A stretch of DNA of 64,000 nt, taken from NCBI RefSeq assembly GCF_006345805.1, contig NC_042999.1, positions 163,556,001 to 163,620,000 on the forward strand, written 5' to 3'. This DNA is from Octopus sinensis. Lineage: Eukaryota. The stretch's first letter is position 1. Each line of letters begins with the position of its first letter. Under the pieces are notes generated by a model. That model saw only the letters and a list, made by a program, of their open reading frames with translations, ran no database searches and was not told the DNA's origin. Of this stretch, positions 8,876-41,862 are shown in pieces. The translations under genes and the position numbers were made by a program.

Positions 8876-9097
8876 ATGTGTGTGTGGGTGGATGTGTGTG
8901 TATGGGTGTATATATGTATGCATGTATATATGTGTACATATTACATGTACATCTATATATATATACATCTACATATACATGTATACATATACATCTATAT
9001 ATATACATGTGGTGCAGCCTTCGGGCTCCCCAGACTCCAGTTGAACCGTCCAACCCATGCTAGCATGGAAAGCAGACGTTAAATGAGGATGATGATG

Positions 9098-9150
<53 letters not shown>

Positions 9151-9153
<3 letters not shown>

Positions 9154-12100
9154 ACTAGTAACAAGGACCTCATCTTTGTAGGTGGAGATTTTAATGGGCA
9201 TGTTGGGCGGGAATCGGGTATCTTCACTGGGGTACATGGTGGCTATGGTATTGGCACCAGAAATGATGAGGGAACTAGACTGCTGGAATTCTGTGATGCA
9301 TGTAACCTTTCAATCTGCAACACTAACTTCAAGAAGCCAGTCTGCCACCTTATAACTTATCAGTCAGGAGACTCCGCTAGCCAAATAGACTTCATCCTCA
9401 CCAGACAACGGGATGCAGGGTTGCTCTTGAATACAAAGACCCTCCCGGGTGAAGAATGTATCCCTCAGCATAGACTAATCATCAGTGACTTTAAGCTTGA
9501 GGCCAGAAGGACTCCAAGAAACAAACCAATCCAGAAAAGAAGGATTTGGAGGCTAAAGAACCCTTCGCATGGTCAGAAATTTAGGGACATACTCATCAAG
9601 AAATTTGATGAGAGGGAGGAGGAGCTTCAGACGTCAGACATAGAAGGTAGCTGGGAATTCCTACGGGACAGCTTGTTGAGTGCCACAGACCAAGTCTGTG
9701 GATGGTGCAAAGTCCCTTCCAGACCTAGAATTACGTGGTGGTGGAATAGTGCAGTAGATAAAGCCATCTGTGAAAAGAGATGGGCCTGGAAAGCCTGGAA
9801 GGATGGGGGCAGCAGGGAACTGTACCAGATAGCCAAAAGGGAGGCTGGGCGGCAGGTATACATTGCCAAAGATGTAGCAGAAAAGAAGAAGTTTGCCAAT
9901 GTCCAGCGTCGCGAGGATCAAAGAGCTGAAGTATTTCGGATTGCCAGACAGTGTGTCAGAGAAAATAGCGATGTTATAGGAGAGAAATGTGTCCGCATGG
10001 ATGATGGGGCACTTGCTTTTACTACTAGTGAAAAGAAAGAGGCTTGGAGAAGCCATTATGAAAGACTGCTGAATGAGGAGAATGAATGGGAGGAGGAGAG
10101 CCTGCCAAATGTTGACCCAGTAGAGGGACCAGCTACCCGAATAGACAGCTCCCTTGTAGATAAGGCAATTAAGGATATGAAACCAGGCAAAGCCCCTGGC
10201 CTATCAGGAATCACTGCTGAGATGCTTAAAACAGCTGGCTATGTGGGCTATGCCATAGTCACCCGCATTGTAAACCAGGTAGTTCACAATGGAGTCATAC
10301 CCAATGACTGGTGCAGCAGCACCATAGTCAACTGCTACAAGGGTAAGGGTGATGCTCTAGATAGAAATAACTACAGAGGTATCAAACTGTTGGACCAGGT
10401 GATGAAGGTCTCAGAGAAGGTCATAACCAATCTCATTAGGGAGAGAATTTGTTTAGATGAAATGCAGTTCGGTTTTGTACCAGGTAGAAGCACCACTGAT
10501 GCTATATTCCTGGTCCGACAACTGCAGGAGAAGTACCTAGCTAAAGATAAACCCCTCTACATAGCTTTTGTAGACTTGGAGAAAGCCTTTGACAGGGTTC
10601 CCCGTTCCCTTATCTGGTGGTCGATGCGGAAACTGGAGATTGAAGAATGGCTAATAAGGGCTGTACAGGCTCTATACAGAGAGGCTGTCAGCAAGGTTAG
10701 GATTGGCAACGAATATAGTGAAGAATTCCGGGTAGAAGTAGGTGTGCACCAGGGCTCAGCGCTCAGTCCCCTTTTATTCATCATAGTCCTTCAGGCAATA
10801 ACAGAGGAATTCAAAACGGGATGCCCCTGGGAGCTCCTCTATGCCGATGACCTAGCTCTCATAGCAGAATCACTACCGGAACTAGAAGAGAAATTTCGGG
10901 TGTGGAAGCAAGGGTTGGAATCAAAGGGCCTTAGAATAAATGTAGCAAAGACCAAAGTATTAGTAAGCAGCAAGAGGTACTCAGCACACATCCCCTCGGG
11001 TAGGTGGCCCTGCTCAACCTGTAGGAAAGGTACAGGTAGAAACTCCATAAGATGCACCCAATGTAAGTTATGGACACATAAGAGGTGCAGCAACATTAAA
11101 GGGAAATTAACAGATAAGATAGCTTTCATGTGCGGCAGATGCACAGGGACAATAGACACAACAGACACTCAGAAAACAGATTCCATCACACTCCAGGGAG
11201 AGAAACTAGAAGTAGTTGATAGTTTCCGCTACCTGGGAGACCAAGTTAGTAGCGGAGGTGGATGCACAGAGAGTATCACCACTAGAATACGAATAGCCTG
11301 GGCAAAGTTCAGAAAGCTCCTACCCCTACTGGTAACAAAAGGTCTCTCCCTCAGAGCAAAAGGTAGATTGTATGATGCATGTGTGCGAACTGCCATGCTT
11401 CACGGTAATGAAACATGGGCTGTGACTGCAGAAGACATGCGTAGACTTGAAAGAAATGAAGCTAGCATGATCCGCTGGATGTGTAGTGTCAGTGTGCACG
11501 CAAAACAGAGTGTAAGTATCCTGAGAGAAATGCTGGATATAAGAAGCATCAGATGTGGTGTGCAAGAGCGATGCTTGCGATGGTATGGTCATGTGCTGCG
11601 GATGGATGAAGAGAGATGTGTGAAGAAGTGCCACTCCCAAACAGTTGAAGGTATCAGGGGGAGAGGTAGACCCAGGAAGACATGGGATGAGGTGGTCAAG
11701 CATGACCTCAGAGCATTGGGCCTCACTGAGGCAATGGTGAAGGACTGAGATCTCTGGAGATATGCTGTGACTACAAAGACCCGGGCTGCTTTCTGCAGCA
11801 ATTCCACATACCCCCTACCCATTCTAAGTACCCCGGATCCCCAAAGTACCCCGATCCCCAAAGTACCCCGATCCCCAAAGTACCCCGGACCTCGTTGCCC
11901 CCGTGCCGCTGACACGTTAAAATGCTCGAACCGATCGTGACGATGCCAGACCCTCCGGCCCCTGTGCAGGTGGCACGTAAAAAGCACCCAATCCACTCAC
12001 GGACTGGTTGGCGTTAGGAAGGGCATCCAGCCGTAGAAACTCTGCCAGATTCAGACTGGAGCCTGGAGCGGCCCCTGGCTTCCCAGACCTGGTCGAACCG

Positions 12101-12155
12101 TCCAACCCGTGCTAGCGCGGAAAGCGGACGTTAAACGATGATGATGATGATGATG
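9151..12155 (+). mobile_element. RTE-clade LINE, subfamily A, 5'-truncated, young
   Basis: Frame open from 9151 to TGA at 11746-11748: APE C-terminus (GDFNGHVG, QIDFIL), RT (YRGIKLL, FVDLEKAFDRV, GVHQGSALSP, YADD), PHD-like finger, GRGRPRKTW. Then a 3' UTR and (GAT)n tail. Confidence 0.95.
11826..11890 (+). repeat. Tandem repeat of about 17-18 bp (AAAGTACCCC(G)GATCCCC) x ~4 in the RTE 3' UTR
   Basis: Read directly from the sequence. Only one unit is present in the homologous copy near 33805. Confidence 0.85.
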
Positions 12156-12172
12156 ATATATGTATATATATA

Positions 12173-12228
<56 letters not shown>

Positions 12229-12231
<3 letters not shown>

Positions 12232-13784
12232 CTGGCAAACTTCCAGGAAAACTGAAGGAAGGTAAAATATGCCCCATTCATAAAGGAGGTAGCAGAGCGG
12301 AAGCCAAGAACTATAGACCTATCTCTCTGACCTCACACATCAGCAAGGTCATGGAACGAATAGTCAGAAGGAAGCTGATCACCTTCCTTGAAGAGAATGA
12401 CTTGCTGCCCGACACCCAACATGGTTTCCGACCAGGGAGAAGCTGTTTAACTCAGCTCCTACAACACTATGACTGGGTGCTGAAACGGCTGCTCAACCAC
12501 TCAAATGTGGAAGTGATATATCTCGACTTTGCAAAGGCCTTTGATAAAGTCGATCATGGAATGATATGTCACAAACTGCGTGATCTCAACATAGTTGGAA
12601 AACTGGGAGAATGGCTTCATGACTTTCTGAAGGATAGAAGTCAGGTGGTAGTAGCCAATGGGGCCACCTCCATTAACACACAAATAGTGAGCGGTGTTCC
12701 GCAGGGCACTGTTCTGGGACCACTACTGTTCATAATGGCCCTCTCAGACATGCCCTCAGCCACGCAGAGAGCCACGATCACAAGTTATGCAGATGATACA
12801 AAAGTTTCACAGGCAATACAGAACCCTGAGGACACTAAACACCTGCAATGTGAGCTGGACGAAATATACAAGTGGGCTGAAAAGAATAGCATGCAGTTCA
12901 ATGCTGGAAAGTTTCAAGCTTTATACTATCAGCATGCAAAACTGAATGCAATACCCAATGAATACACTGGACCCGGAGGGATTGCAATCCCAGAGGCACA
13001 ATCAGTGCGTGACCTGGGTATTCACATGAGTGATGACGCGACCTTTCATGTACATGTTGCTAAACTGACAATGAAATGTAGACGGCTGGCTGGATGGATT
13101 CTTAGAACCTTTAGAACAAGAGAACAAGAAACCATGATGGTCCTCTGGAAGACACTTGTCCTAAGCCACTTTGACTATTGCTCTCAGCTATGGTCACCAT
13201 CCAGTGTCAAGTTGATCACAGAACTTGAGGCGATCCAACGAAGCTACACAAAGAAGATAGCCTCTATGCAGAATGTAAGCTACTGGGAAAGACTCAAGAG
13301 ATTAAAATTATATTCCCTGGAGCGTAGGCGGGAAAGATATGCCATAATATACATCTGGAAGATCCTGGAGGGAAGTGTCCTGAACTTTGGCATCGAGAGT
13401 TACGCAAATGCCAGAACTGGGCGCCACTGCGTGGTGCCTAGGACTCCAAACCTGCCATCAAGATGTAGGACAAGATTCTGTGATAGCTGGGCTTCCGAGG
13501 CCCACAGCTCTTCAATATCCTCCCGAAGAACCTGAGAGACCTGCATGGGGTGGATACAGATGTCTTTAAAATGAAGCTGGATCTCTTCCTGTCTGGTGTC
13601 CCAGATGAACCAACTTCACGGCAGGAGGGGCAGATGAGGGCAGTTGCATCGAACTCTCTTATGCACCAAATAGCAGTTGCTAGAAAGCCTCCATGAAGTG
13701 AAACCAAGTAGCAACACCAAATGGCGGTGCCCCAGCATGGCCACAGCTCATAAGCTGAAACTAGAATCAATCAATCAATCAATC

Positions 13785-17682: not shown

Positions 17683-18206
17683 ACACATACCTTTCCTTCT
17701 TGGGACACAAAACTCCACTTGTGAAGACCCGTTGAGGCAAGTGAAAATCAAAATCAAAATCAAGCCAAATCAAATCAGAAAGCAGAACCAAAATCGAAGT
17801 CGATTAACATCAATGGAAATTGCAGCTGTGATACCAGTGCCGGTGACAAGTAAGCGAACCATCTGATCGTGGCCGTGGCCAGTGCCGCCCCGACTGGCCT
17901 CCGTGCCGGTGGCACGTAAAAAGCACCATCCGTTCGTGGCCGTTGCCAGCCTCACCTGGCCCCCGTGCCGGTGGCACGTAAAAAGCACCATCCGTCTGTG
18001 GCCGTTTGCCAGCTCCGGGTGGCACGTAGAAAGCACCCACTACACTCACGGAGTGGTTGGCGTTAGGAAGGGCATCCAGCCGTAGAAACACTGCCAGATC
18101 AGACTGGGCCTGATGCAGCCTTCTGGCTTCACAGACCCCAGTTGAACCGTCCAACCCATGCTAGCATGGAAAGCGGACGCTAAATGATGATGATGATGAT
18201 GATGAT
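17683..18206 (+). mobile_element. RTE subfamily B 3' UTR fragment
   Basis: Matches 15830-16311 and ends in CCATGCTAGCATGG...(GAT)n. Confidence 0.9.
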
Positions 18207-18930
18207 TCCTCCTGAAGGAGGTGTTATTCTTTGGACATTTGTAGAAAGGAAAGATCTTAAATTTTCCTTCTCCACATGTATCTAGGTGTTTACTCAGTGG
18301 TATCTTGCGCAGTTCCTCCTGTCGGACATGTTGTTGGTGAGTTCTGGCTCGTTGGCATAAAGAATTTCCAGCTTCACCTATATAATCCTCCTTGCATGTG
18401 GGGCAGGTTATGCAGTATATTACATTCTGCATCTTGCAGTTCATATCTGCATTTATTTTGAATATGTGACTACTTTTAAATTTCATTTCTATGTCTCCCT
18501 CTATGTGGGGTTACTGCAGATCTTTACAAAGAATTCAGTTTTAGTCTCCGATGAGTTAGTTGTTTCTTCAGGTTTTTGTCTTGGCATTTACTGTTTTTTT
18601 ATTTGTTTAATACGTTTCCCATTTTGGGGCTTTGTAGGACTATTGGTAGGTTTGAATGTATGATTTGGAACATGTTGGTAACTCCAGGGTTGTGTGTGTT
18701 TATGAAAGGGATGATGTTCTTTTTGTTTTTCGTTTTTGGAGTTCTGAGTTCTGTGATGTCCAGTTTCATTGCTCTTGTGATTCCATTTTTTATTAATTTC
18801 TGTTCTAGTAGGAAGTTTTTAAGTTCATTTAGTCTTATTTGGCGTGTTTGTGAGTCGGTCACTATGCTGCATATGCGTCTTGCCATACTATATGGAATGT
18901 TTCTTTTTATGTGGGATGGGTGGTAGGAGT
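18207..18930 (-). mobile_element. Penelope-like element GIY-YIG endonuclease remnant
   Basis: NVIYCITCPTCKEDYIGEAGNSLCQRARTHQ (GIY-YIG with Cys/His motif) and the upstream IPFINTHNP segment. Confidence 0.85.
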
Positions 18931-19203: not shown

Positions 19204-19577
19204 GTGAAGCCATGTATTTTCATGAACGCACTAATGAGATTTGTGCTGAAATGCTCATGAAAATATTGTCACTTCAGCTGATTTTGGGTAGTTTGGTAAC
19301 AAAGGGTTAAACGCTTATTTAAATATATGTGTCTACGGCAAACTTGCAAAACATTGAATGCTTACAATTGTTTCTCTTGCTTACAGCTAGAAACTGCAGT
19401 TAAGTAAATACACTGATGCACCCTATTACTATGTAGTATCTAAAAATTTATTAGAAATATATAAAATTAATTCATTTTTGTATTAGGTTTGCTTGATTCT
19501 TTATGTGAATTTGTGTGTTGAAACAAATTTTCTGTATCTTGGGAATGTCATTATAATAATAATGATAATAATAATAA

Positions 19578-20597
19578 TAATCATCATCATCATCATCGTT
19601 TAACATCCGTTTTCCATGCTAGCATGGGTTGGACGGTTCAACTGGGGATCTGGGAAGCCAGAAGGCTGCGCCAGGCCCAGTCTGGTCTGGCAGTGTTTCT
19701 ATGGATGGATGCCCTTCCTAACGCCAACCACTCTGTGAGTGTAGTGGGTGCTTTTTACGTGCCACCTGCACAGGTGCCAGACGAGGCTGGCAAATGGCCA
19801 CAGACGGATGGTGCTTTTTACGTGCCACCGGCACGGGGGCCAGACGAGGCTGGCAATGGCCACAATCGGATGGTGCATTTTACGTGCCACCGGCACGGAG
19901 GCCAGTCGGGGCGGTGCTGGCAACAGCCACGTTCGGATGGTTCTCTTACGTGCCATCGGCACAGGTATCACAGCTACAATTTCCATTGATGTTGATCGAT
20001 TTCGATTTTGATTTTCATTTTGATTTTCACTTGCCTCAACAGGTCTTCACAAGTAGGGTTTGTGTCACAAAAGGGAAAGGTATGCATAAGTGGGCTGGCT
20101 ACGTCCCAGGTAGAGGCCATGGGTTATGGTCTGACTTGTCCTGCCGGGTCTTCCCACGCACAGCATACTTCCAAAGGTCTCGGTCTCTGGTCATTTCCTC
20201 GGTGAGACCTAATGTTTGAAGGTTGTGCTTCACCACCTCGTCCCAGGTTTTCCTGGGTCTACCTCTTCCACAGGTTCCCTCAACCGCTAGGGTGTGGCAC
20301 TTTTTCACACAACTATCTTCATCCATTCTCGCTATATGACCATACCAGCGCAGACGTCTCTCTTGCACACCGCAACTGATGCTTCTTAGATCTAACTTTC
20401 CTCTCAAGGTACTTACACTCTGTCGAGTATGAACGCTGACATTACACATCCATCGGAACATACTGGCTTCATTTCTTGCAAGCTTACGCATGTCCTCAGC
20501 AGTCACAGCCCAAGTTTCACTGCCATGTAGCATGGCTGTTCGTACACATGCATCATACAGTCTGCTTTTTATTCTGAGCGAGAGGCCTTTTGTCACC
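19578..20597 (-). mobile_element. RTE subfamily B 3' fragment
   Basis: Reverse complement of the ORF end (GLSLRIKSRLYDACV...RGKTRQDK) plus 3' UTR and tail. Confidence 0.92.
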
Positions 20598-20704
20598 ATA
20601 ATAATAATAATAACATGCATGGATTCAATTCCACTTATTGTTAGGCAATTGGTTAAATACCTAACCAACCAACCAACTAATCAATCATTTGTTTACTATA
20701 CTGG

Positions 20705-21202
20705 TTAAACAATCATTCAGCTGTTTGTTAGTCAAAGTTCTTTCACTGCTGTTTGCAACCTTTTCAATGACTTAATGACTTCCCTTCTTGCTCCAAGGTC
20801 TGCTCTGAATCTGTCTGAAAATCGGTCTGATGTCTCTGTGTATGCATGCTTGTATGTGTGTTTGCTTAGAAGAGGAGGTAAGGATGAGAGTAAACAAAGG
20901 GTTTGTGTGTGTTTGCATGTGTACACCCATGTGACTGCTTATACGTGTGTTTGGGTGTATGTGCACTAGCCATCCATGACCTCTGTAAGTGGTTGGCCTT
21001 TTGTCCTTTCTGTTCTTGGTCAGTCTCTTGTTTGCTGAAGATTTATGGGTTTAGAGTGTGCATACACTCTCAGATATAATGCCAACTCTCAGACAGAGGC
21101 AGAGGAGACCTTGAAGTGAATGGGAAAGTTACTAAGTTACTGAAAAAGCCACAAGCAGCAACGAGAGAACTTCGACTAACAAACAACTGATTGATTGTTT
21201 AA
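20705..21202. repeat. Imperfect inverted repeat, 114-bp arms, about 78% identity
   Basis: 20705-20818 is the ungapped reverse complement of 21089-21202 with about 25 mismatches (hand count). Confidence 0.8.
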
Positions 21203-22212
21203 TGACCACATTAAACAAACAATAAAGGAGTGAAATTGAACCTATGCATGTGTTATTGTTGGCATAATGACTCTCAAGAAACAATAAAATAGATTAATGT
21301 ATATCATGTAACCGTCTAAATGTAATTTTTGTTTTTATTCTTATTTTAAAATTTTGCTTCTATCTTTTTAGATATTCTTGGTATACTTTAATTTCACATC
21401 TTTATGATTTGGAATATCTAGTTTGAGATATATGAGCATTATTGTGTGGTAATAAGCTCTTAGTATATTGTGTCTGTCTCAGTTTAATTTCTGTTTTTCT
21501 GGTTAAAGAAGTCAAACCTTTCTCAATAAACTGGAGAAAGGCAATAACTGCTTAATTGACTTGTTCTTCACACTGTTGTTGCAGTCCATATTTTATTGGG
21601 TTATAGAAGTACTGCTCAAAATAGTTTTCATGCAATGATTTCTTGTGCATATCAGCCTGGCCAAGTCCATTGCTCTATATTTCTAGCAGAATTTGAAGTC
21701 CATATTGTAAGTTAACAATGCAGTTGCTTTTCTTTTTTTTACATCTATAGGCTTTCTGTCAACTATATCCTTTACACTTAGTAGTTATTTTGCATGGTCA
21801 CGACATAGCATTTGTAGGATACAAATGTTTGGTTATTAGGTTGGTAAATTGACACACTATTGATTTGTCCATCTGTACCATTTCTTTGATGGCAAAAGTT
21901 TCAGTACTATTCCCTATAACTCAAGTTGTAGGACATTATTAATTTCATGTTTATAAATGCACAAATTGGACTAAGCTAAAAAATAAATAATGGACAAAAT
22001 GGAATAAGCAGGACAAGAGGAGACACATGGAACAGAGTTACTGATGGGGTCACAGAATGTGTGATGAAAGAAATTTGACAGATGTATAAACTAAAAATAA
22101 TAAAAGTAGAAACTAAAGTGAAGGTTGAATAAATAGTGTGTGTGTTTAATTGGCAAAAAACAAATGACCATCCACAAGTATAAAAAAATAATTTTTCTTT
22201 CAATATTTCCAG

Positions 22213-22357
22213 CTAACACCATCACACCCACTGTTGAACTGAATGCCCTTGCAATGAAAAGGGGTGAACCAGCCATTTACAAAACATTTGAACATCGCCA
22301 TCCATTTTATTCTCCTACGCCCCACAACTATGATTATAGAGGATATTACAATCAAAG
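22213..22357 (+). CDS. stau: staufen exon: dsRBD2 N-half and Pro/Tyr-rich insertion
   Basis: ttccag|CT...CAA AG|gtacag; ANTITPTVELNALAMKRGEPAIYKTFEHRHPFYSPTPHNYDYRGYYNQR. TPTVELNALAMK is the Staufen dsRBD2 signature. Confidence 0.95.
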
Positions 22358-22823
22358 GTACAGTTAAATGTAGATTTTCTTTCATTCAAAAACTTGGTTT
22401 CTGGTGCGGTATTGCTTATATATTTTATAATTTAGTACTATAAAAAGTAAATCTAGGTAAATCCTTTTTCTTAATTTTAATTCTAATGTCTTCCACTCAA
22501 CACTTTTTGTCTGAAGCATCTATTATGGTGTTGATGCATGATAGTAAAAATGTGAAAAACTCTATCTTTGGTCATCTAAATACATGTTCATTTCTTAGTT
22601 AGGAAGAGAATCATTCTTAATCAGCCACAATTCAAACCGTTTTACCAAACTCTTGCAACAAACCTTCTACTTGAGTATTAGAGGCTTTTCATATTTATTA
22701 TGACAAAAAGTTAATTTTACATTTAGTGAATAACTTCAAACTAAACAACACAGTATTTTTGGTTTATTTTTAAGGTTTGTTCTACATTTTTCAAACTTGT
22801 AAAAATGTATTCATACAGAATAG

Positions 22824-22982
22824 GCACAGGCGTGACTGTGTGGTAAGAAGCTTGCTTTCAAACCACATGGTTCTGGGTTCATTCCTACTGCATGGCACCT
22901 TGGGCAAGTGTCGTCTACAATAGCCTTAGGCTGACCAAAGCTTTGTGAGTGGATTTGATAGACAGAAACTGAAAGAAGCTTG

Positions 22983-23016
<34 letters not shown>

Positions 23017-23490
23017 CAAATTGGGGGTTGTGAGTGCAACCCACCATGGGATAACATGTATCCAATATACTGCTAGTAAAGTACCCAACAAAGTTAATAA
23101 GAATTGCGATGCAGTTAATTCATTCACTGTATTATATGGGCAAAGGTAAAATGTTTTACCACAAATTAATAATACAAAATAAGAAAATGGAGAAATACAT
23201 CTTAATCAATAATCAACTACCAGAAAATACCCAATCACATAATTTATTAACCCACTACATATGAACATTAAGGTCAAACATAATAATATAGAACAAAACA
23301 ATGTACATCAATGAGTAATATGTACATTGTTTTGTTCTATATTGTTATGTTTGACCTTAATGTTCATATGTAGTGGGTTAATAAATTATGTGATTGGGTA
23401 TTTTCTGGTAGTTGATTATTGATTAAGATGTATTTCGAGTCATTCAACTAAAAATCCAAGGCAGTCTAATGACTGAAACAAGTAAAAGGA
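22824..23490 (+). mobile_element. SINE family A copy whose centre is replaced by an unrelated AT-rich insert
   Basis: Head at about 22824-22985; tail fragment GGCAGTCTAATGACTGAAACAAG at about 23437-23490. Confidence 0.6.
23192..23436. repeat. Near-perfect inverted repeat: 117-bp arms, 11-nt loop
   Basis: 23192-23308 pairs with 23320-23436 with a single T/G mismatch; loop CAATGAGTAAT. Confidence 0.95.
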
Positions 23491-24250
23491 AAAAAGATAA
23501 AGATAAATGTTGATAATTTAAGCAATATCGTTCTTCCCTTCTTTTCATATTCAAGTATGCCATCATAATATTTCAAATGGCTTGTAGTATATATCTTTGA
23601 ATTAACTACAGTTCTTTCATAATCCCTGTTTTAATGTTGATTTTCTAATGCTAGAATGGTTTTGACATGGCTTTTTGTTTCTATTTCAACTATGAAAACC
23701 AATGTTCTCAGATCAGACCTCACCTCTTCTGTTCATGGGTAAAGTCCTCTGTTGGCTGAAAGCATATTTTCAATTCATGTTTTACATAATTTCATCCTAA
23801 TGGTTTTGAAACTGAAAAAAAAACAAAACCTTTCAAATTGTTATGACATCCTGCACCAGGGACAAAGGACCTATCATATGTAATGCATGCACTGCATGCC
23901 TTACTATTTTTCCAGGATAACTAATTTTTGTGTCATATAACTTATTGATAATTTTCACTATTCTCATTGTACTTGAATTTTTTTGTTTTTCCCATTCTTT
24001 CATTTGTAAGTATGAATTGTAAACAACTGATATTATTTAATAAGTATAAGTAAAGAAAATGGCTGTTTGCTTAGTGAGAAAAGAAGGAAAAGCCGTAAAT
24101 AATTGCTTTGCTGCTCCTTCTTCAAAAAGAAGAGGGAGTGTGAAAGAAAAAAACAAATGAGTGGTTAAGAGAGAGACAAACAGAGAAAGGCAACTATTTT
24201 TTTAAGAGAGTTCTATTATTCTTTTTGAGAAGGGAGTATTAAAAAGATAG

Positions 24251-24638
24251 GATGGAAGCACTCCGTCGGTTACGATGATGAGGGTTCCGGTTGATCCGAA
24301 TCAACAGAACAGCCTGCCCGTGAGATTAACGTGTAAGTGGCTGAGCACTCCACAGACACGTGCACCCTTAACGTAGTTCTCGGGGATATTCAGCGTGACA
24401 CAGAGAGTGACAAGGCCGGCCCTTTGAAATACAGGTACAACAGAAACAGGAAGTAAGAGTGAGAGAAAGTTGTGGTGAAAGAGTACAGCAGGGATCACCA
24501 CTATCCCCTGCCGGAGCCTCGTGGAGCTTTTAGGTGTTTTCGCTCAATAAACATTCACAACGCCCGGTCTGGGAATCGAAACCGTGATCCTATGACCGCG
24601 AGTCCGCTGCCCTAACCACTGGGCCATTGCGCCTCCTG
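24251..24638 (-). mobile_element. tRNA-Arg-like SINE family B (probably octopus OR-type)
   Basis: Head GGCGCAATGGCCCAGTGGTTAGGGCAGCGGACTCGCGGTC...GGTTTCGATTCC; 9-bp TSD aaaagatag (24242-24250 / 24639-24647). Confidence 0.88.
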
Positions 24639-24929
24639 AAAAGATAGACAAAACAAATGAGTGAGTAGTCAAGAGAGAGAAAGGCAGAGGAAAGCAAATG
24701 TTTTTACTGCTTGTTTTCTTGTTATGTTAAACCAGCAGACACACTGTCCACATATTTTCTCCTGAAGCACTGATGTTTTTACTGCCCTGTGTAACAGAGA
24801 TCAAAGGTTTGCCTATTCAAATGACTTAAACCTTTCCTCTTGGTTGGGCAGATTCAGATTTAGTCAATTTGCAAGTTTGCTTTATTGCTGATTCTGGTTA
24901 ATTCCATATGATTATTTGGTTCTGAAGAG

Positions 24930-25345
24930 TATACTCTTTTACTCTTTTTACTTGTTTCAGTCATTAAACTGCAGTCATGCTGGGACACTTCCTTGAAGAA
25001 TTTTTAATTGAATGAATTGACCCCCAGTATTTTTTTTTTTTTAAAGTCTGGCACTTATTTTCTCAATCTCTCATGCTGAACCACTAACTAAAGGGAACAT
25101 AAACAAACCAAGACCAGTTGTCAAGTGGTGGGCGAAGACAGACAAACATGCACACACAACTATACACACACACATACATGTATATATAATGGGCTTCTTT
25201 CAGTTTCTGCCTGCCAATTCCACTCACAAGGCTTTGGTTGGCCCAAGGCTGTAGTTGAAGACACTTGCTTAAGGTGCTCCACACTGATACTGAACCTAGA
25301 ACCATGCAATTGGGAAGCAAACTTCTTACCACACAGCCATGCCTG
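24930..25345 (-). mobile_element. SINE family A
   Basis: Reverse-complement tail (ACTCTTTTACTTGTTTCAGTCAT) through head (CCACACAGCCATGCCTGC). Confidence 0.8.
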
Positions 25346-26894
25346 CTTTTTAAAATAAAATGATTTAACCCATGGAGAGTATTCTGGGTCCTTTCTTAAG
25401 AACCGAATTCAGTCATGTAACCCTAAAATTTTCTCAATTAGTTCACATTTGAAACAAAGAAGCAGCTTACTTTTTTGTGATTAAAAAGTAAAATTTTCAT
25501 CTATTTATCCATGCTAATGCTTTAAAATGATTTTAAAATAGTTGTGTTTAAGTAAACAAGCACCTAAATGTTTTGTTAGAATAAAACTTCGACTCAATTT
25601 AAAAAGTAACCTTTTTTATGCCCAGGATGGCACAAGAGTCAACTAGCTCAGTTTCCTCTCTACTTTCCCAACCTTTGCAACAAAAAGTATATTATCATTC
25701 TCAGAAAAGAGAAGCCAAAGCTTGAAATGAAAATCGAAACCAAAGTGGGCAGAAAGGAATGTCATCATTATTTTTATTCCAAGTATTGTGAATAGTATGA
25801 GTGAATGATGTCTCATTCTTAGCAAATTTTTCTTTTTCCCATGTCTGTCATTTTGTCAGCATTTTGTCACATGGACAGCTACTGGCTACTGTGATTTGTA
25901 CAATTTGATTACAGCTTTAACAAAATACAAGCATCTCAGAACCTGAACCCTGTAATTACTCTGAAAACTTTGGTCAAATGAATTGATACAGCAATTAATC
26001 ACTGGCAAGCAGGTTTGATTCACCTCCATAATAGATCAGTTGAGAAAACTCATGATGTATTGAAAAGGTTAATTCATTGTATCAAAATTTTGGCCTGTCA
26101 AGAATTACTATTTGAAGGACACAATGAAACAGAAGAATCAAACTATAAGGGTAATTTTGTGGCTATACATGAAGCAGTAGCAGAATATAATGGTTGTTTA
26201 AGATAGTGTTTAGATCTTGTGAAGAAAACTGCCAACTGCACATTTTCTGGACTTTCAAGTGATAATCAAAACAAGATCATTTCATTATATAGCTGCTACA
26301 AGTGAAAGTGAAACTAAGCCAATGATAAAAAAAATAGCATTTGTTGCTGTTATGTCAGATGAGACTATAGAACTTCAAATGAAATCACAATCATCACATG
26401 TTTTGCAATTTGTTGATGCGAAGGAAAAGCCTCAAGAAAGGTTTTTGGGATACATCAATGTCAGCAGAGATAGAAAAGCTGCATTGCTGACAGAAGTTCG
26501 AAAATTTGTTAATTAATTCAACTGTGGCCAAAAATTCATCACACAAACTTAGGATGAAACAAATCTGATGGTTGGGTATTTGGACAGAGTGCAAACAAGA
26601 ATAAAGGAGACTTTTGGCGCAAAATCATATTTGTACATTGTTTATGCACATTCACTTAATTTGGTACTTTCTCAGTCAGCTTCAAGTATTCATGAATGTC
26701 GAGTTTTCTTCCAAATTTTACAAGAAATTTTGACTTTTTTCTCTAAGTTAATGGCTTGAATAGCCCTACTGGATGAAATTATTAGGTGATTTCCAAAGTT
26801 ACCTGAGACATGTTGGAATTATTCATCTCAACAAGTATCCATTTTGTCTAAACAAAATTACTGTTGTTTTCTGAGCTGTTTTCAACTATATTAG

Positions 26895-27306
26895 AATCAG
26901 AATCGAAATCGATCAATGGAAATTGCAGCTGAGTTACCAGTGCTGGTGGCACGTAAGAGAACCATCCGAACGTGGCCGTTTCCAGCGCCGCCCTGACTGG
27001 CCTTGTGCCGGTGGCACGTAAAAAGCACCATCCGTTTGTGGCCGTTGCCAGCGCCGCCCCGACTGGCCTCGTGCCTGTGGCACGTAAAAAGCACCATCTG
27101 TTCGTGGCTGTTTGCCAGACTCGTCTGACACCTGTGCCGGTGGCACGTAAAAAGCACCCACTACACTCATGGAGTGGTTGGCATTAGGAAGGGCATCCAG
27201 CCGTAGAAACATTACCAGATCAAACTGGGCCTGGTGCAGCCTTCTGGCTTCCCAGACCCCAGTTGAACCGTCCAACCCATGCTAGCTTGGAAAGTGGACG
27301 CTAAAC

Positions 27307-27339
<33 letters not shown>
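26895..27339 (+). mobile_element. RTE subfamily B 3' UTR fragment inserted in the hAT remnant
   Basis: Four ~60-bp units plus terminal hairpin and long (GAT)n tail; ATTAGAA-like sequence at both ends. Confidence 0.88.
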
Positions 27340-27340
<1 letters not shown>

Positions 27341-27590
27341 AGAAAATCCAGAGGATTGGAGTGCTTCAGAATTAGAACTGAATTGAGTGGCTCAGATTCT
27401 GTTTTCGATTCTTCAAAAAAGTCTACTTGACATTTCGAGATGTATTCATGAAGTTGAGAACTTCAAAAAACAGTTGGTTGGTACTGTTGCAGTAGGTGTA
27501 ATTGTATTAATTGTGGTGTGAGATTAGGCTGGCTACATATATTACAAACAGAAGCAAAGCTCTTGAATATTTAACTTCAGATTTATTTAA

Positions 27591-27811
27591 CCCTTTAGCA
27601 TTTAAACCGGCCATATCCGGCCAAAAGTATTCTGCCTGTTTTATGTTCAAACTGGCCAGATCTGGTCTCTCACACCAACCCTACAATATCGATTAAAAAA
27701 TTAACAGCTACCTCATCAAAATCTCATAGCACCAAGATAATGCCTGATTAGTTCAAGGCAATGTGGATAAAAAAGGATTAATTTTGGCAGAATAATGCGA
27801 ACACTAAAGGG
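27591..27811. mobile_element. piggyBac-type MITE (221 bp)
   Basis: TTAA|CCCTTTAG ... CTAAAGGG|TTAA (TSD at 27587-27590 and 27812-27815). Confidence 0.85.
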
Positions 27812-28584
27812 TTAAAGGAAGGCTGAACATGAATACATACATAAATTGTCAAATCCTCACTGGTATAGAAACTAAGATGTAGGGATCAACTTAACTGTGA
27901 CTACTAAACAATTAGTTATCTTCAAGATGTGAGCAACTGCTGGATCTTGTTGAAACTTTGTCTTGATTTGCTTAGTGAGAGCTGAGTTGTGTTCTCTTTG
28001 AATGCCATGAGAATTTTGGTAGGTATCCAGCACTAAACTGCTCAACAGGAGAAAATGTGTAATTCTCAATAACTCTTTAGGTAATGTTCTAACTGATATT
28101 ATGATTTCCTGCAAACTGGTGGGTTGAAAAAACCCAAAAAGGTTGTTCATATCAAGATTGCATGCCCCAACTGTGGCTCATTACACTATCAAGAACAAAT
28201 TTGAAGAATTTTACTGCTGGGTTATGGATGGTGCTGCTGAACCATCAGAGAAGCATGGTTACCATCAAGTGCCAGAAGCTGTTTTAAGAACTTTCTTTAA
28301 CAACATTTTGCATGAAGTTATTGCTGACATTGAGCAAAGATTTAAAACACCATTGTTTAAGATCTTTGAGTTCAGATTTTTACCATGAAAATTTTGGATG
28401 GAACCATTTTCATTTTTGGATATCTATAAAAACATATTGAATGAGATTTTACAAAGCAAGTGTCAAACATCCAAGAAGTTGCTGACATAATATGGAAGCT
28501 TGAATTAAATCAAACTCCGACCTAAGTAACAAAATTTTTATGCCTGATTGTGACCATACCTGCCATATCTACTTCCCGTGAGAA

Positions 28585-28745
28585 ATTTCTTTATCATCAT
28601 CATCATCATCATTTAGATGCCCTTCCTAACACCAACCACTCCGCAAGTGTAGTGGGTGCTTTTTACGTGCCACCCGCACAGGAGCCAGACGGAGCTGGCA
28701 AACGGCCACGAACGGATGGTGCTTTTACGTGCCACCGGCACGGAA
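28585..28745 (-). mobile_element. Internally deleted RTE tail fragment
   Basis: (CAT)n followed by GATGCCCTTCCTAAC...GGTGCTTTTTACGTGCCACC. Confidence 0.75.
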
Positions 28746-28934
28746 GACATAGATTATTATATGAAGTGTTCTCAAAGTGAAGAGAGATTGAGTAATTTGG
28801 TCTTCATTTCCACGAATGAAAACCTGTAGAAGATGAAAGTAGAGTGTGGTGTGTTTACATTTCATACCAAAGTGGTCAATGAATTTACCAAGAAGAAACA
28901 AAGAATTGAACTGGTTTACAAATAAATTTTAAAT

Positions 28935-29097
28935 AGCTCAGGAGTGGCTGTGTGGTAAATAGCTTGCTAACCAACCACATGGCTCCGGGTTCAGTCCCAC
29001 TGCGTGGCATCTTGAGCAAGTGCCTTCTGCTATAGCCCCAGGCTGACCAATGCCTTGTGAGTGGATTTGGTAGACGGAAACTGAAAGAAGCCTGTCG

Positions 29098-29138
<41 letters not shown>

Positions 29139-29341
29139 TTGTGTTTGTCCCCCTAGCATTGCTTGACAACCGATGCTGGTGTGTTTACGTCCCCGTCACC
29201 TAGCGGTTCGGCAAAAGAGACCCATAAAATAAGTACTGGGCTTACAAAGAATAAGTCCCGGGGTCGATTTGCTCGACTAAAGGCGGTGCTCCAGCAAGGC
29301 TGCAGTCAAATGACTGAAACAAGTAAAAGAGTAAAGAGTAT
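28935..29341 (+). mobile_element. SINE family A, near full length
   Basis: CAGGAGTGGCTGTGTGGTAA...GGGTTCAGTCCC, internal (TA)n(TG)n, tail GTAAAAGAGT. Confidence 0.9.
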
Positions 29342-29707
29342 TAGGTTTTATTATTTTCTCAGACGTCTCTTATAACCAATAACAGTCATCATGGCAAGCT
29401 TATTGCCAGGGTATTGCTAATGGAGGAACATGAAGTCCAGTGCAGAGCGAGTATCAAGCCCAAAGTGTGGCCTTTTGGTAGACATGCATTTTCTCACATT
29501 AAAATTAGTTCATATCACATTCATAGATGGTGTTGGGTGTGAATAGCTTTTAGTGAAGGGGAGACTAAGGCTCCACAACCCCTTGGTGATTGTCCTGCAT
29601 GTTCTGTTTCCAAGTCACCATTCACCACTGAATTGTACCCCTATTTTGAGATTATTTGTGCAAGTTATCTTATTATCAACTGATCATGAGAAATGTAGAA
29701 ATTTGTA

Positions 29708-31032
29708 TCAGGTCATTAAGACTAAATTGTTTATTTTATTTTACTTTATCTCATAAAGTTTATTTTACTTTATCTCATAAAGTTTATTTTACTTTATCTC
29801 AACAAAAAGCAATGCAGTTAATCAAAGTATGCACCTAAATTATCAACTCAATTTTGCCATTTTATCGGTATCTTATTTATGCTGGCAGCAAAGAATTCTG
29901 GAGAGCAAGAGATGATGAAATCACAAAAAACTCTTTTGCATCTTCATATTTGAAGTTTTTTCCTTGCGAAAAGTTGTCTAATGCTGGGAAAAACATGATA
30001 GTCACTTGGTGCAAGATCTGGTGAATATGGTGGATGACAGAGTACTTCCAAGTTCAGTTCCTGTAACATAAGTAGTGTTCTTTGTACTACATATGGTCGA
30101 GCATTGTTTTGCAAGAGAATTGGCCTATCTCTATTGACCAATCTCGGTTGTTTAATTGCAAGTTCACTCATCATTTCATCCATTTGGTTGATGTATACAT
30201 CTACTGTAATTGACTTACCAGGTCTCTTGAAGCTCATGAAGTAGTGGATGACACCAGTACTGGACCACCCAAACAGACATCATTAGCTTTTTTTGGTGAA
30301 TATTCTTTTTTGGATTGTGTTTTGGCATTTCATCTCTATCCAACCACCATGCAGAATGCTTGCTATTGTTGAAAAGAATCCATTTTTCATCACACATAAC
30401 AATATGATGCAAAAAATGGTTTGCTTTTATGCTGTGACAGCAAAGAACAGCAAGTTTCAGGATGATGTTTCATTTGATGCCTGTTCACTTCATGTGGTAC
30501 TCACTTGTCCAGCTTCTTTACCTCGTCGATTTGTTTCAGATGGTCCAATACAGTTGAAATTGAAACATCAAACCTTACAGCTAACTCACGCATAGTTAGA
30601 GATGTATCCGCCTTTCACTACAGTTTCCAGCTCATCATTATCCACCTTGGTCTCAGGTCTACCATGGGGCTGATTTTCAAGAGTAAAGTCACCAGGCCGG
30701 AACTTCTCAAACCATTGGCATACAGTGTGCTCATTCACTAGACCTTCATCAAACATCTCATTGATGTTTCGAGCAGTTTGGGATGCATTGGTTCCACGAC
30801 TGAACTCATATTCATAAACAACATGAATTTTTGATTTATCCATGAGTTTACAAAAATTGATTTACGTGAGAAAACTTGTAATATAATCAGACACCGTGGA
30901 TTGTATTTCAAAAAATGATGTTTTAATTCTTCAATGTTGTAAAATAAAGAATTGTCACAATAAAGCATTAAAGTTAACAACTGTCAAACTTGGTGCATAA
31001 GAAAATCAAACATTTAATTCTTAATGACCTGA
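29708..31032 (-). mobile_element. Full-length decayed mariner transposon (about 1.3 kb)
   Basis: TA-flanked TIRs of about 27 bp (TCAGGTCATTAAG / CTTAATGACCTGA). Transposase fragments MDKSKIHVVYEYEF, CDEKWILF, HPPYSPDLAPSDY in shifted frames. Confidence 0.92.
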
Positions 31033-31500
31033 TAGGTTGTTCATACAATTCTGTATTTCTGAAATGAGGACTTTTTGTATTACATATTAATTGTGGAGTG
31101 GTGTCTTCATCTTGGTTGTTTGTTAAACTACATTTATTTCATATTTTTTGTTGAAAAACGTATTCAGAAATATTAACAAATTTCAAGCTTTATGAAGTGT
31201 CTTTCTCATGAGCAATTGTTAGATTATTCTGTAAATCATAGCTCTTAAAGTGTTGATATGAACTACTTATGATATTCTTACGTATTTTGATTTTCCTTTA
31301 TGCTACTTTAAAAATCATATCCTTTGTCAATATGAATTCTTCTTAGAATTTGGGAATGAATCCCAAGCTATTTTATTTCTCTGCAGTTGTACAAATTCAT
31401 TAATAGTTAAAGATATCTTTGAGTTTAATGGAAATTAAAGCAGTTTCCAGCAGTTATTTATTGAAATCATAAAACATGCTCCTTTTGATTTTATTTGTAG

Positions 31501-31691
31501 GTATCATTTCCCCAGGGTTTCCAAAATGAGTTATGTCTCTCTAAAAGTTGGTCATCGTGAATTCAGTGGTGAAGGTTTAACCCGCCAAGCTGCCCGGCAT
31601 AATGCTGCTGCTAAAGCACTTCAAGTCTTGCACAATGAACCAATTGTTAACACAAAAAAGAAAGAAGTTATTGAGGAATCAAACACTGAAG
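31501..31691 (+). CDS. stau: staufen exon: dsRBD2 C-half
   Basis: ttgtag|G TAT...GAA G|gtattt; YHFPRVSKMSYVSLKVGHREFSGEGLTRQAARHNAAAKALQVL. Not listed in this frame in the ORF track, but phases fit both neighbours. Confidence 0.94.
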
Positions 31692-32705: not shown

Positions 32706-32819
32706 GATATTAATCATATAGATATATCTAAAGACAAACTGATGATAACACAAAGTAATAAATATTTAGATTCCTGTCTCGAATCTTTTATGATTTAAGT
32801 TTTTTATTTCCCTCTTTAG

Positions 32820-32896
32820 ATAAAGACCAATTAAAATCTGAAATTAGTCTAGTCCATGAAATTGCTTTAAAGCGTAATTTGACAGTCTCTTTTGAG
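32820..32896 (+). CDS. stau: staufen exon: dsRBD3 helix 1
   Basis: ctttag|AT...GAG|gtaagt; DKDQLKSEISLVHEIALKRNLTVSFE (KSEISLVHEIALKRN signature). Confidence 0.95.
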
Positions 32897-33000
32897 GTAA
32901 GTTGACTTTATCTAAAGAGTTTGTAACCATTTGATGCTGGGACTTTTGAAAATAAAATTACAATTTCTGGAAAAAAAATCTTAAATGTATCTTAAATATA

Positions 33001-38058: not shown

Positions 38059-38158
38059 NNNNNNNNNNNNNNNNNNNNNNNNNNNNNNNNNNNNNNNNNN
38101 NNNNNNNNNNNNNNNNNNNNNNNNNNNNNNNNNNNNNNNNNNNNNNNNNNNNNNNNNN
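38059..38158. other. Assembly gap (100 N)
   Basis: Run of n characters. The true length is unknown, so additional staufen exons here cannot be excluded. Confidence 0.99.
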
Positions 38159-39657: not shown

Positions 39658-39882
39658 GTTACTCGTGAATCTGGTCCACCTCATATGAAAACTTTTGTCA
39701 CCCAGTGTTCTGTTGGTGAGTTTGTTACAGAAGCTGAGGGAAACAGCAAGCAGGTCTCTAAGAAGAGAGCCGCCGAGTCAATGTTGGAAGAACTGAAGAA
39801 TTTGCAACCTCTTCCTCCAACATCAGTACGCCCAAAAGCCAAATCAACCACTAGCAAGAAGAAAAATAGGAACCTCATAAAG
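39658..39882 (+). CDS. stau: staufen exon: dsRBD3 remainder and basic NLS-like patch
   Basis: ctttag|GTT...AAG|gtttgc; [43 protein letters not shown]...KKKNRNLIK. Confidence 0.96.
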
Positions 39883-40319
39883 GTTTGCTATTTGTTTTGA
39901 AAATTTTAAAGTCTCTTCAGGAATGGCATCTAATAGATGAGAATGATATTTTATTGATTTAAACAAAAAAAAGTGTTTATTCTAATGTGATGCTTATTCT
40001 ATGCAAAAATTTAAATTGGAAGAATGTTTTACATTTCAGGGTTAGTAAGATAATTTCTTGTGCAGCCATGAAACATAAGAATTATATGAAAGTGAGAACA
40101 ATGCATAGAGTTTAGATGAACTATAACTAGCTGGGAATTAAAATCATCATGGTCTCTATTCATTAAGAAATAGTTCCCCTGCAAAAGAATGAAAATCTGT
40201 AATAGTTGATGGATTAATTGTTAGGGCTGACCAACTCTCTCGCTGCTTAAAATTCTCTGCTCTTTATGAAAGAAAGGAAATGGGTTAAACATGAATAGCA
40301 TAGGTACAGATGTGGCTAA

Positions 40320-41860
40320 AGGTGTAGGCATGACTATATGGTAAGAAGTTTGCTTCATTCTATGAGTCTCTATTGCCAAACCACTAAGTTACAGGGATAT
40401 AGAAACTCCTTGTTACTTCCAGAAAGGAAGACTGGATTAATGAAAGGATATATATTCCAACTAGGTCACTGGCCTGAGCAGAATCATATGAGCCCATTGC
40501 TACATCAAATGAATTCGTCCTATCTAATCTACTCCATAATCTACCATCAAAATCTACTAGAGTGGCTTGCATATGAAGTATAATATCTATTTCACATCAG
40601 AACAAATCAGAATTTTTCATGCTAAAATTCTTGATTAAGAATGATTGGGTCAATAGTGGCATAATGGCTCTCTATATCTAGTTGCAAGAATTTACTATTC
40701 TTACTAATTTCTAGAAGCTTAAACCATCCAACAACCTCTTGGGTATCAGACCAGAGGACTAATCTAATTTTAGACTTAAGGACAGGTATTACCTATCAAT
40801 GATTTTTTTACTAATAGTGCCTATATTGGATTTAAGATAAATCAATGTAACAGAGGGGTTGATAAGAATGTTAGATTTATGGGTTTTTGAAGGACATAGG
40901 GTTCGGTTCTATCATCTATTGCTAGATCTCTGATGATTTGTAGCCCTGTATTGTTAAATCTTTTTAATACGTCATTACTAGCATGTCTATATTTACTGTG
41001 TCATTCCTTCCTAATCATAGACTTATATAGTTCAATATCAACAATGTAAATGTTACTTGCTTTGTCCACTGGTACAAGTATCCCTGGTGCTTTCTTGAAG
41101 TCAACAAGTAATTTCTGATTTTTTGTTGATGTATATTACACCTTCTAGGGTACTTCCTGAACTTCATGTTCTTAACTATACTCTTTTACTTGTTTCAGTC
41201 ATTTCACTGCGGCCATGCTGGAGCACCGCGTTTAATCGAGCAACTCGACCCTGGGACTTATTCTTCGTAAGCCCAGTACTTATTCTATCGGTCTCTTTTT
41301 GCCGAACCGCTAAGTGACGGGGACATAAACACACCAGCATCGGTTGTCAAGCAATGCTTGGGGGACAAACACAGACACACAAACATACACGCACACACAC
41401 ATACACACATATATATATATATATACATACATACGACAGGCTTCTTTCAGTTTCCGTCTACCAAATCCACTCACAAGGCTTTGGTCGGCCCGAGGCTACA
41501 GTAGAAGACACTTGCCCAAGGTGCCACGCAGTGGGACTGAACCCAGAACCATGTGGTTGGTAAACAAGCTACTTACCACACAGCCACACCTGCGCCTATA
41601 TTATACTATATAATTCTTCTTCAAACTTGGTTGGGTGTTGGTTAGTTCGTGGGTTCCTTCTGGATTTGAATACTTTTCTTAGTAGGTCACCATGTTTAGG
41701 TTTGTTATTTGGTTTAAGCTCCTTGTCGAAAAAGAAAGCTTTCCACCACATTCTCCATACAAATTGGTTGGTTTTCTTCAAAAGATCACATATATAATCC
41801 TTCCTACTGGATGGTATAGGTATGTCCTTTAGTGAAACATCCAGTGTTTTTTTATCAATC
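40320..41860 (-). mobile_element. Decayed Penelope-like element RT region, split by a SINE
   Basis: SFDVAMGSYDSAQASDLVGIYILS (PLE RT motif) and KDIPIPSSRKDY...MWWKAFFF (PLE N-terminal motif). Confidence 0.75.
41177..41597 (-). mobile_element. SINE family A, full length
   Basis: Reverse complement of the 47159 copy. Confidence 0.9.
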
Positions 41861-41862
41861 AT

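What the first reader, a model, noticed from the sequence alone, without database searches (positions are those of the whole stretch)
23192..23436. Near-perfect 117-bp hairpin inside staufen pre-mRNA
Seen: arms 23192-23308 and 23320-23436 are exact reverse complements except one position, which is a U-G wobble on the sense transcript, with an 11-nt loop. It lies about 835 nt downstream of the dsRBD2 exon and is embedded in a disrupted SINE. Established: perfect duplexes of more than 100 bp are substrates for Staufen, ADAR and Dicer, and long perfect palindromes are unstable in DNA. Inference: a recent fold-back event that gives a dsRNA-binding protein a high-affinity site in its own transcript (possible autoregulation, hyper-editing or endo-siRNA source). 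A fold-back assembly artefact is possible.
Basis: partly seen in the sequence, partly recalled or inferred. Interest (0 to 1): 0.7.

Follow-up and report, generated by a model that had tools for sequence, protein, structure and literature searches.

The report
Young 245-bp palindrome in Staufen intron
A near-perfect 117-bp hairpin really is present in an intron of a mollusc Staufen gene, but it looks like a recent, probably neutral, local inverted duplication, and nothing shows that it regulates the gene.

Summary
Arms 23192-23308 and 23320-23436 are 116/117 complementary around an 11-nt spacer. The one mismatch (23284 T / 23344 G) is a U·G wobble on the + strand. Predicted RNA folding energy is -185.8 kcal/mol (z = -31).

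The gene is Staufen, on the + strand. The hairpin lies 835 nt into a 9,143-nt intron (22358-31500) that splits dsRBD2.

The arm has no other copy in the window and no abutting target-site duplication. It reaches no Rfam gathering score. It does not resemble the SINE-like repeat whose head (22822-23014) and tail fragment (23461-23488) flank it. The arms end sharply at unrelated flanks, 14.6 kb from the only assembly gap, which does not fit a typical fold-back assembly artefact.

My best reading is a young local inverted duplication made by template switching or snap-back synthesis. Its pre-mRNA would carry a long duplex that ADAR-type enzymes would probably edit before the intron is degraded. 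Autoregulation of Staufen is unsupported: the element is intronic, and the same pre-mRNA already holds several longer TE-derived inverted repeats.

No orthologous or independent sequence could be retrieved, so age, polarity and reality in other individuals remain untested. Interest is low to moderate.

The parts
23192..23308 (+). Left arm of the palindrome (117 nt; A-rich on the + strand: A58 T29 C23 G7)
23309..23319 (+). 11-nt spacer / loop, CAATGAGTAAT
23320..23436 (+). Right arm, the reverse complement of the left arm except at one position
23284..23284 (+). T that pairs with G at 23344: the only mismatch (U·G on the + RNA, A·C on the - RNA)
23301..23308 (.). ATGTACAT, a self-complementary 8-mer at the inner end of the left arm. 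It recurs at 23320-23327 and is a possible snap-back priming microhomology.
   Evidence: sequence read directly
22213..22357 (+). Staufen exon encoding the N-terminal half of dsRBD2 (…ITPTVELNALAMKRGEPAIY…YYNQ), followed by donor GT at 22358
22358..31500 (+). The 9,143-nt intron that holds the hairpin (GT…AG; 36% GC)
31501..31691 (+). Staufen exon encoding the C-terminal half of dsRBD2 (RYHFPRVSKMSYVSLKVGHREFSGEGLTRQAARHNAAAKAL…)
22822..23014 (+). Head of a ~400-bp SINE-like interspersed repeat plus its (TA)n microsatellite (profile positions 3-195, E = 1.8e-55)
23015..23191 (+). Unique AT-rich stretch upstream of the palindrome. It has no match to the SINE body or to anything else in the window.
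23461..23488 (+). 28-nt fragment of the SINE-like 3' tail (profile positions 373-400), in the same orientation as the head

Best explanation
This is a genuine, evolutionarily young local inverted duplication. During replication or break repair, a nascent strand that had copied the left arm and spacer folded back on itself. It may have primed at the self-complementary ATGTACAT that flanks the 11-nt spacer. It then copied about 109 further nucleotides of the left arm in reverse, and returned to the original template. The result is a 245-bp AT-rich palindrome inside repeat-rich intronic DNA of Staufen.

Shown: the structure, its position in the intron on the sense strand, its uniqueness in the window, and the lack of transposon hallmarks.

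Inferred: the template-switch mechanism, that the left arm is the source copy, the young age, and neutrality.

Consequence (inferred from established dsRNA biology): each pre-mRNA briefly carries a 117-bp perfect duplex. It folds co-transcriptionally, is a good substrate for promiscuous ADAR editing and other nuclear dsRNA-binding proteins, and is lost with the excised intron. It is a passenger, not a regulatory device for Staufen.
For: - The two arms are 116/117 identical with an 11-nt spacer, and the arms end sharply at unrelated flanks.
- The arm has no further copy in 64 kb at word size 7.
- No target-site duplication abuts the arms beyond a 2-nt GA.
- No similarity to the flanking SINE-like repeat.
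- It is the only short-spacer, near-perfect inverted repeat in the window that is not a microsatellite.
- The innermost 8 nt of each arm are self-complementary. That gives an 8-bp stem with an 11-nt loop from which fold-back priming could start.
- Both flanks and the left arm are A-rich on the + strand, while the right arm has the opposite skew. This hints that the right arm is the inverted copy.
- Template switching is documented to create perfect inverted repeats and hairpins in one step in animal genomes (PMC5453318, PMC8794818, PMC10710096).
- With the octopus transposon clock (JC 0.09 ≈ 25 My, PMC13282606), one difference in 117 gives about 1.2 My, 95% range 0.03-6.5 My. This holds only if that rate applies to this organism and arm-to-arm correction is ignored.
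Against: - No ancestral (pre-duplication) state was available, so the mechanism and its polarity are untested.
- 117 nt is long for reported short template-switch events. The largest pattern in the rRNA study was 59 bp (PMC8794818).
- The ATGTACAT and GAGT junction features were noticed after the fact.
- One 64-kb window cannot exclude a dispersed repeat family elsewhere in the genome.
- No read-level evidence excludes an assembly error.
Confidence: 0.6

Rival explanations
1. It is one copy of a hairpin-like non-autonomous DNA transposon (a MITE or foldback-type element) that recently inserted into the intron.
For: The unit is inverted-repeat over its whole length, 245 bp, AT-rich (74% AT) and non-coding. 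It sits in transposon-rich DNA. MITE-like units, many of them single-copy calls, are reported in an octopus genome (PMC13282606).
Against: No target-site duplication longer than 2 nt (GA) abuts the arms. Shifting the ends inward to a TA or TTAA leaves unexplained complementary bases outside them (read directly from the sequence). No second copy, even diverged, is present in the window. No exact match to two arm segments was found in metagenome or viral contigs. MITEs normally have an internal non-repeated segment and diverged arms.
Confidence: 0.15
2. It is an assembly or sequencing artefact: a fold-back chimeric read, or a graph traversal that turned round, giving a palindrome absent from the real genome.
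For: Perfect palindromes are a known failure mode of assemblers and of some library preparations (established knowledge). The window is scaffolded, with a 100-N gap at 38059-38158. The single mismatch could be a heterozygous site or a consensus error.
Against: Complementarity stops abruptly after 117 nt on both sides and continues into different, collinear sequence: a SINE-like head upstream and a tail downstream, in the same orientation. An artefact would therefore need two switches. Missed-adapter or duplex chimeras give read-length arms. The nearest gap is 14.6 kb away. The arms are not 100% identical. No other such palindrome occurs in the 64 kb.
Confidence: 0.12
3. It is a selected cis-acting dsRNA element. 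Candidates are a Staufen autoregulatory site, an ADAR-dependent switch, or a precursor of small RNAs.
For: The host gene encodes a dsRNA-binding protein. The duplex is extremely stable on the sense strand. If the intron were retained or cleaved early, a stop codon follows 4 codons into it, and the hairpin would then sit in a 3'UTR.
Against: It is intronic in the exon model supported by homology. Rfam gives only sub-threshold, strand-symmetric matches to generic miRNA hairpins, 23-42 bits against gathering scores of 68-97. A 117-bp perfect stem is not the shape of a miRNA precursor. Near-identical arms indicate youth, not long-term conservation. Other long inverted repeats lie in the same pre-mRNA. 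No paper was found describing Staufen autoregulation through an intronic hairpin.
Confidence: 0.04

Closest known systems
Template-switch mutations that create perfect inverted repeats or hairpins (Ripley model; four-point model of Löytynoja & Goldman, PMC5453318; Mönttinen & Löytynoja, PMC8794818, PMC10710096)
   Same: A reverse-complement copy lies directly beside its source, separated by a short spacer, is perfect at birth, and can fold as an RNA hairpin.
   Different: At 117 nt it is longer than most reported events, which are tens of nt. The ancestral state needed to prove the event is missing here.
Palindromic AT-rich repeats (PATRRs) of human chromosomes 11, 17 and 22 (recalled from established knowledge)
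   Same: An AT-rich (74% AT), near-perfect palindrome with little or no spacer, predicted to extrude as a hairpin or cruciform (DNA dG -125.5 kcal/mol) and therefore expected to be unstable.
   Different: PATRRs are several hundred bp per locus and are defined by recurrent translocations and polymorphism. Neither is known here.
Inverted-repeat Alu pairs and other intronic dsRNAs edited by ADAR and bound by Staufen1 (human dsRNA map, PMC11838218)
   Same: An intramolecular long duplex in a pre-mRNA. In human protein-coding loci about 96% of predicted dsRNAs are intronic, as this one is.
   Different: Those duplexes come from two separate transposon insertions with mismatches and long loops. This one is non-repeat-derived, perfect and has an 11-nt loop. 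Known Staufen1 sites act in 3'UTRs, not introns.
MITE-derived hairpins (for example Made1 / mir-548) and Drosophila hpRNA endo-siRNA loci (recalled from established knowledge)
   Same: A long, nearly perfect fold-back transcript of non-coding DNA.
   Different: No target-site duplication and no family copies were seen, and no small-RNA data are available. Rfam thresholds were not met.
dsRNA-binding or dsRNA-processing proteins that act on a duplex in their own transcript (ADAR2 self-editing in an intron, Drosha cleavage of DGCR8 mRNA, RNase III cleavage of the rnc leader; recalled from established knowledge)
   Same: The gene for a dsRNA-binding protein carries a strong duplex in its own primary transcript.
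   Different: Those elements are conserved and imperfect, and they sit where processing changes the mRNA. Here there is no conservation evidence and no obvious route from an intronic duplex to a change in output.

Membership tests
Template-switch / snap-back inverted duplication | A reverse-complement copy lies adjacent to its source, with a short spacer | tested here: met
   Arms 116/117 complementary, 11-nt spacer
Template-switch / snap-back inverted duplication | Microhomology at the switch point able to prime fold-back synthesis | tested here: inconclusive
   The self-complementary ATGTACAT on both sides of the spacer would serve, with a chance of about 1/256. But it was noticed after the fact and the ancestral sequence is unknown.
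Template-switch / snap-back inverted duplication | The ancestral or orthologous sequence has one arm only | not testable with these tools
   No orthologous or independent locus was retrievable
MITE / foldback transposon | A target-site duplication abuts the terminal inverted repeats | tested here: not met
   Only a 2-nt GA is shared by the flanks; no repeat of 3-10 nt
MITE / foldback transposon | Multiple dispersed copies | tested here: inconclusive
   None in the 64-kb window.
miRNA precursor families (Rfam mir-2804, mir-5879, mir-4703, mir-2985 and others) | Score at or above the family's gathering threshold | tested here: not met
   Best 42.1 bits against a threshold of 86. Matches on both strands are nearly equal, so they reflect generic hairpin shape only.
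Staufen-binding site of Staufen-mediated decay | The duplex lies in the 3'UTR of the mature mRNA | tested here: not met
   It lies inside intron 22358-31500 between the two dsRBD2 exons
Staufen-binding site of Staufen-mediated decay | Bound by Staufen in vivo | not testable with these tools
   Needs CLIP or RIP
Fold-back assembly artefact | The mirror symmetry runs to a contig, read or gap end, or the flanks are mirrored too | tested here: not met
   Symmetry ends after 117 nt; the flanks are unrelated and collinear; the nearest N run is at 38059
Fold-back assembly artefact | No independent reads span both arms | not testable with these tools
   No read data available
PATRR-like unstable palindrome | AT-rich, near-perfect palindrome able to form a hairpin or cruciform | tested here: met
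   26% GC; DNA hairpin dG -125.5 kcal/mol, z = -35
PATRR-like unstable palindrome | Size polymorphism or rearrangement hotspot in populations | not testable with these tools
   Needs population data

The most novel reading that the evidence does not exclude
The palindrome is maintained, not merely young, and feeds back on Staufen. In an intron-retaining or prematurely polyadenylated isoform, translation stops 4 codons into the intron and the 117-bp duplex sits in the 3'UTR. Staufen protein, or ADAR editing, could then tune the output of its own gene. This would be a newly born autoregulatory loop in a lineage with very heavy RNA editing.
Probability: 0.04. Interest if true: 0.6.

Novelty: new member of a known kind. 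Interest (0 to 1): 0.2.

Why it matters
If it is real, it is a clean and unusually long example of a perfect hairpin created in one step in an animal germ line. Such events are the raw material from which new structured RNAs can arise, and at the DNA level they are potential fragile sites.

Its location in the gene for a dsRNA-binding protein is striking, but on present evidence coincidental. It would matter more only if population, orthology and RNA data showed that it is retained and acted on.

Tried and rejected
- **Looking for the same locus or other copies elsewhere.** Four exact-product look-ups of ORFs in and beside the arms found nothing. Three exact-pattern scans with two arm segments of 22-25 nt, two of metagenome contigs and one of viral contigs, found nothing.
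- **Reaching an orthologous Staufen gene.** The best database proteins are only 66% identical over the dsRBD2 exon and 84% over the dsRBD1 exon, and all sit on short contigs. No orthologous intron could be fetched.
- **Naming the organism from a LINE ORF.** The hits were about 50% identical and almost all unnamed. A literature search for two SINE strings found nothing. 'Cephalopod' therefore stays a memory-based lead. 'Mollusc' rests on the best named Staufen hits, Biomphalaria and Potamilus.
- **Testing whether the arms or the upstream stretch are diverged SINE body.** Local alignment, global alignment and a profile search all stayed at shuffle level. Rejected.
- **Target-site duplication search.** Negative.
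- **Rfam.** Only sub-threshold generic hairpin matches.
- **ARAGORN.** It finds no tRNA in the SINE-like heads, so the SINE label rests on size and copy number.
- **Treating the sense-strand wobble as meaningful.** Rejected: any transition gives G·U on one strand and A·C on the other.

Full report
**Observation**

The arms are 23192-23308 and 23320-23436, 117 nt each and 99% complementary, with 11 nt between them. A base-by-base comparison finds one mismatch, T at 23284 against G at 23344. The spacer is CAATGAGTAAT, and complementarity does not continue into the flanks.

Folded as + strand RNA, the whole stem pairs, the mismatch forming a U·G wobble. The energy is -185.8 kcal/mol, against -47.5 ± 4.5 for dinucleotide shuffles (z = -31). 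On the - strand the same position is an unpaired A·C. As single-stranded DNA the hairpin energy is -125.5 kcal/mol (z = -35). This cannot be chance.

**Gene context**

Peptides from + strand exons retrieve proteins that their sources name Staufen. The best named hits are molluscs (Biomphalaria 63%, Potamilus 61%), and the best overall hit is 66% identical. Pfam finds dsrm and Staufen_C domains.

tblastn with the best hit lays out the exons:
- dsRBD1 C-half at about 417-620
- dsRBD2 N-half at 22213-22357
- dsRBD2 C-half at 31501-31691
- dsRBD3 at about 32819-32902 and 39658-39894
- dsRBD4 C-half at 52261-52414
- the Staufen C-terminal domain from about 60454 and about 63596

The donor GT is at 22358 and the acceptor AG at 31499-31500, and the reading frame joins correctly (…YYNQ-R-YHFPRV…). 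The hairpin therefore lies in a 9,143-nt intron that splits dsRBD2, 835 nt past the 5' splice site and on the sense strand.

**Repeat context**

The window is full of a roughly 400-bp SINE-like repeat, with at least 12 copies in both orientations. A profile built from six of those copies finds the head plus (TA)n at 22822-23014 (E = 1.8e-55) and a 28-nt tail fragment at 23461-23488. It finds nothing for the 177-nt body.

The 446 bp lying between head and tail includes the palindrome. It scores at shuffle level against the SINE body in local and global alignment. The palindrome is thus flanked by pieces of a SINE-like repeat but is not derived from it. The 175 bp upstream of the left arm is also unique in the window. 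ARAGORN finds no tRNA in the heads, so the SINE label rests on size and copy number only.

**What the palindrome is not**

- The arm has no second copy in the window, even at word size 7.
- No direct repeat longer than GA abuts the arms. Redefining the ends at an internal TA or TTAA leaves complementary bases outside them unexplained. The transposon signature is therefore absent.
- Rfam returns only generic miRNA-hairpin models at 23-42 bits, against gathering scores of 68-97, and about equally on both strands.
- Among 54 inverted-repeat pairs in the window, this is the only one that is not a microsatellite and combines a short spacer with near-perfect arms. The others are transposon pairs at 74-96% complementarity, separated by 236-2,907 nt.

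**Artefact?**

Fold-back chimeras from missed adapters or duplex read-through give mirror symmetry over the rest of the read. Here symmetry stops after 117 nt on each side. The flanks are different sequences that are collinear with each other: the SINE-like head upstream and the tail downstream, in the same orientation.

The only N run is 14.6 kb away, and the arms differ at one base. An artefact would need two precise switches. I consider it unlikely (about 0.12), but it cannot be excluded without reads.

**Most likely origin**

The anatomy fits a one-step inverted duplication by template switching or snap-back synthesis. This mechanism is documented to create perfect inverted repeats and RNA hairpins in animal genomes (PMC5453318, PMC8794818, PMC10710096). 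Three details fit, but all were noticed after the fact.

- The innermost 8 nt of both arms are ATGTACAT, which is its own reverse complement. A nascent strand ending in the second copy could pair with the first, forming an 8-bp stem with an 11-nt loop, and then copy the left arm backwards.
- GAGT occurs both in the spacer (23313-23316) and as the first four bases after the right arm (23437-23440). This could be a junction duplication.
- Both flanks and the left arm are A-rich on the + strand (AT skew +0.18 to +0.38), while the right arm has skew -0.35. This suggests the right arm is the inverted copy.

At 117 nt the event is long for this class. The largest pattern in the rRNA study was 59 bp (PMC8794818).

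One difference in 117 corresponds to about 1.2 My (95% range 0.03-6.5 My). This uses the octopus transposon calibration of JC 0.09 ≈ 25 My (PMC13282606). It assumes that rate applies to this organism and that no arm-to-arm correction has occurred.

**Likely behaviour (inferred from established knowledge, not tested)**

The duplex forms co-transcriptionally in every pre-mRNA. Perfect duplexes longer than 100 bp are promiscuously deaminated by ADARs and can be bound by any dsRBD protein present in the nucleus. The intron is then excised and degraded. At the DNA level, an AT-rich 245-bp palindrome with an 11-bp spacer belongs to the class known to be unstable, which fits its apparent youth.

**Autoregulation idea**

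Nothing supports it.

- The element is not in the mature mRNA, where Staufen-mediated decay sites act.
- The same pre-mRNA carries other long inverted repeats. Examples are 55647-56067 against 56669-57047 at 94-96%, and 17710-18207 against 19576-20061 at 86-93%.
- In human protein-coding loci about 96% of predicted dsRNAs are intronic (PMC11838218), so intronic dsRNA is commonplace.
- A literature search found no report of Staufen autoregulation through an intronic hairpin.

One loophole remains. Read-through from the exon meets a stop codon 4 codons into the intron. A retained-intron or early-polyadenylated isoform would therefore carry the hairpin in its 3'UTR. I give a selected function about 4%.

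**Limits**

No orthologous intron, second assembly or read set could be reached. The organism could not be named beyond mollusc. A cephalopod origin is my recollection of the SINE sequence and was not tested. Polarity, age, copy number in the genome and presence in other individuals are therefore open. They are the decisive next steps.

**Verdict**

This is a new instance of a known kind of event, of low to moderate interest.

Noticed in passing
window 17710-18207 and 19576-20061: A large inverted repeat in four blocks (arms about 500 nt in total, 86-93% complementary, about 1.4-2.2 kb apart). It carries a 66-nt tandem unit (GTGCCGGTGGCACGTAAAAAGCACC…), and the same unit forms a 3.4-copy array at 26940-27158 in the hairpin's intron. 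It looks like a foldback-type or composite repeat.
   Followed up: partly
window 55647-56067 and 56669-57047: Two SINE-like copies in inverted orientation, 94-96% complementary (arms of 158 and 228 nt) and 601-945 nt apart, in the intron before the Staufen C-terminal exons. This is another strong dsRNA former in the same pre-mRNA.
   Followed up: partly
window 24253-24638; 57676-58061; 45056-45409: A 386-bp repeat is 96% identical to an inverted copy about 33 kb away and 93% identical to a third copy. It is an unclassified, fairly young interspersed repeat.
   Followed up: no
window 9064-11745 (+) and 12135-13532 (+): A long open LINE-type reading frame (894 aa without a stop; reverse transcriptase, endonuclease and PHD domains in its relatives), about 50% identical to hundreds of database proteins. 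A second 466-aa RT-like frame follows it. Both lie in the intron between the dsRBD1 and dsRBD2 exons.
   Followed up: partly
database protein P0177: A close relative of the window's LINE protein is labelled as a protein of a bacterial metagenome-assembled genome (Candidatus Thiodiazotropha from a lucinid clam). This is probably host retrotransposon DNA binned into the symbiont genome.
   Followed up: no
window 38059-38158: A run of exactly 100 N (a scaffold gap) inside the intron between the two dsRBD3 exons. It is the only gap in the window.
   Followed up: no
window 20688-20835 and 21072-21219: An inverted repeat of 148 nt at 74% complementarity with a 236-nt spacer, just upstream of the dsRBD2 exon. 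Origin unknown.
   Followed up: no
window 39895-52260: The exon for the N-terminal half of dsRBD4 was not located by tblastn with the available relatives. The exon map between 39894 and 52261 is therefore incomplete.
   Followed up: no
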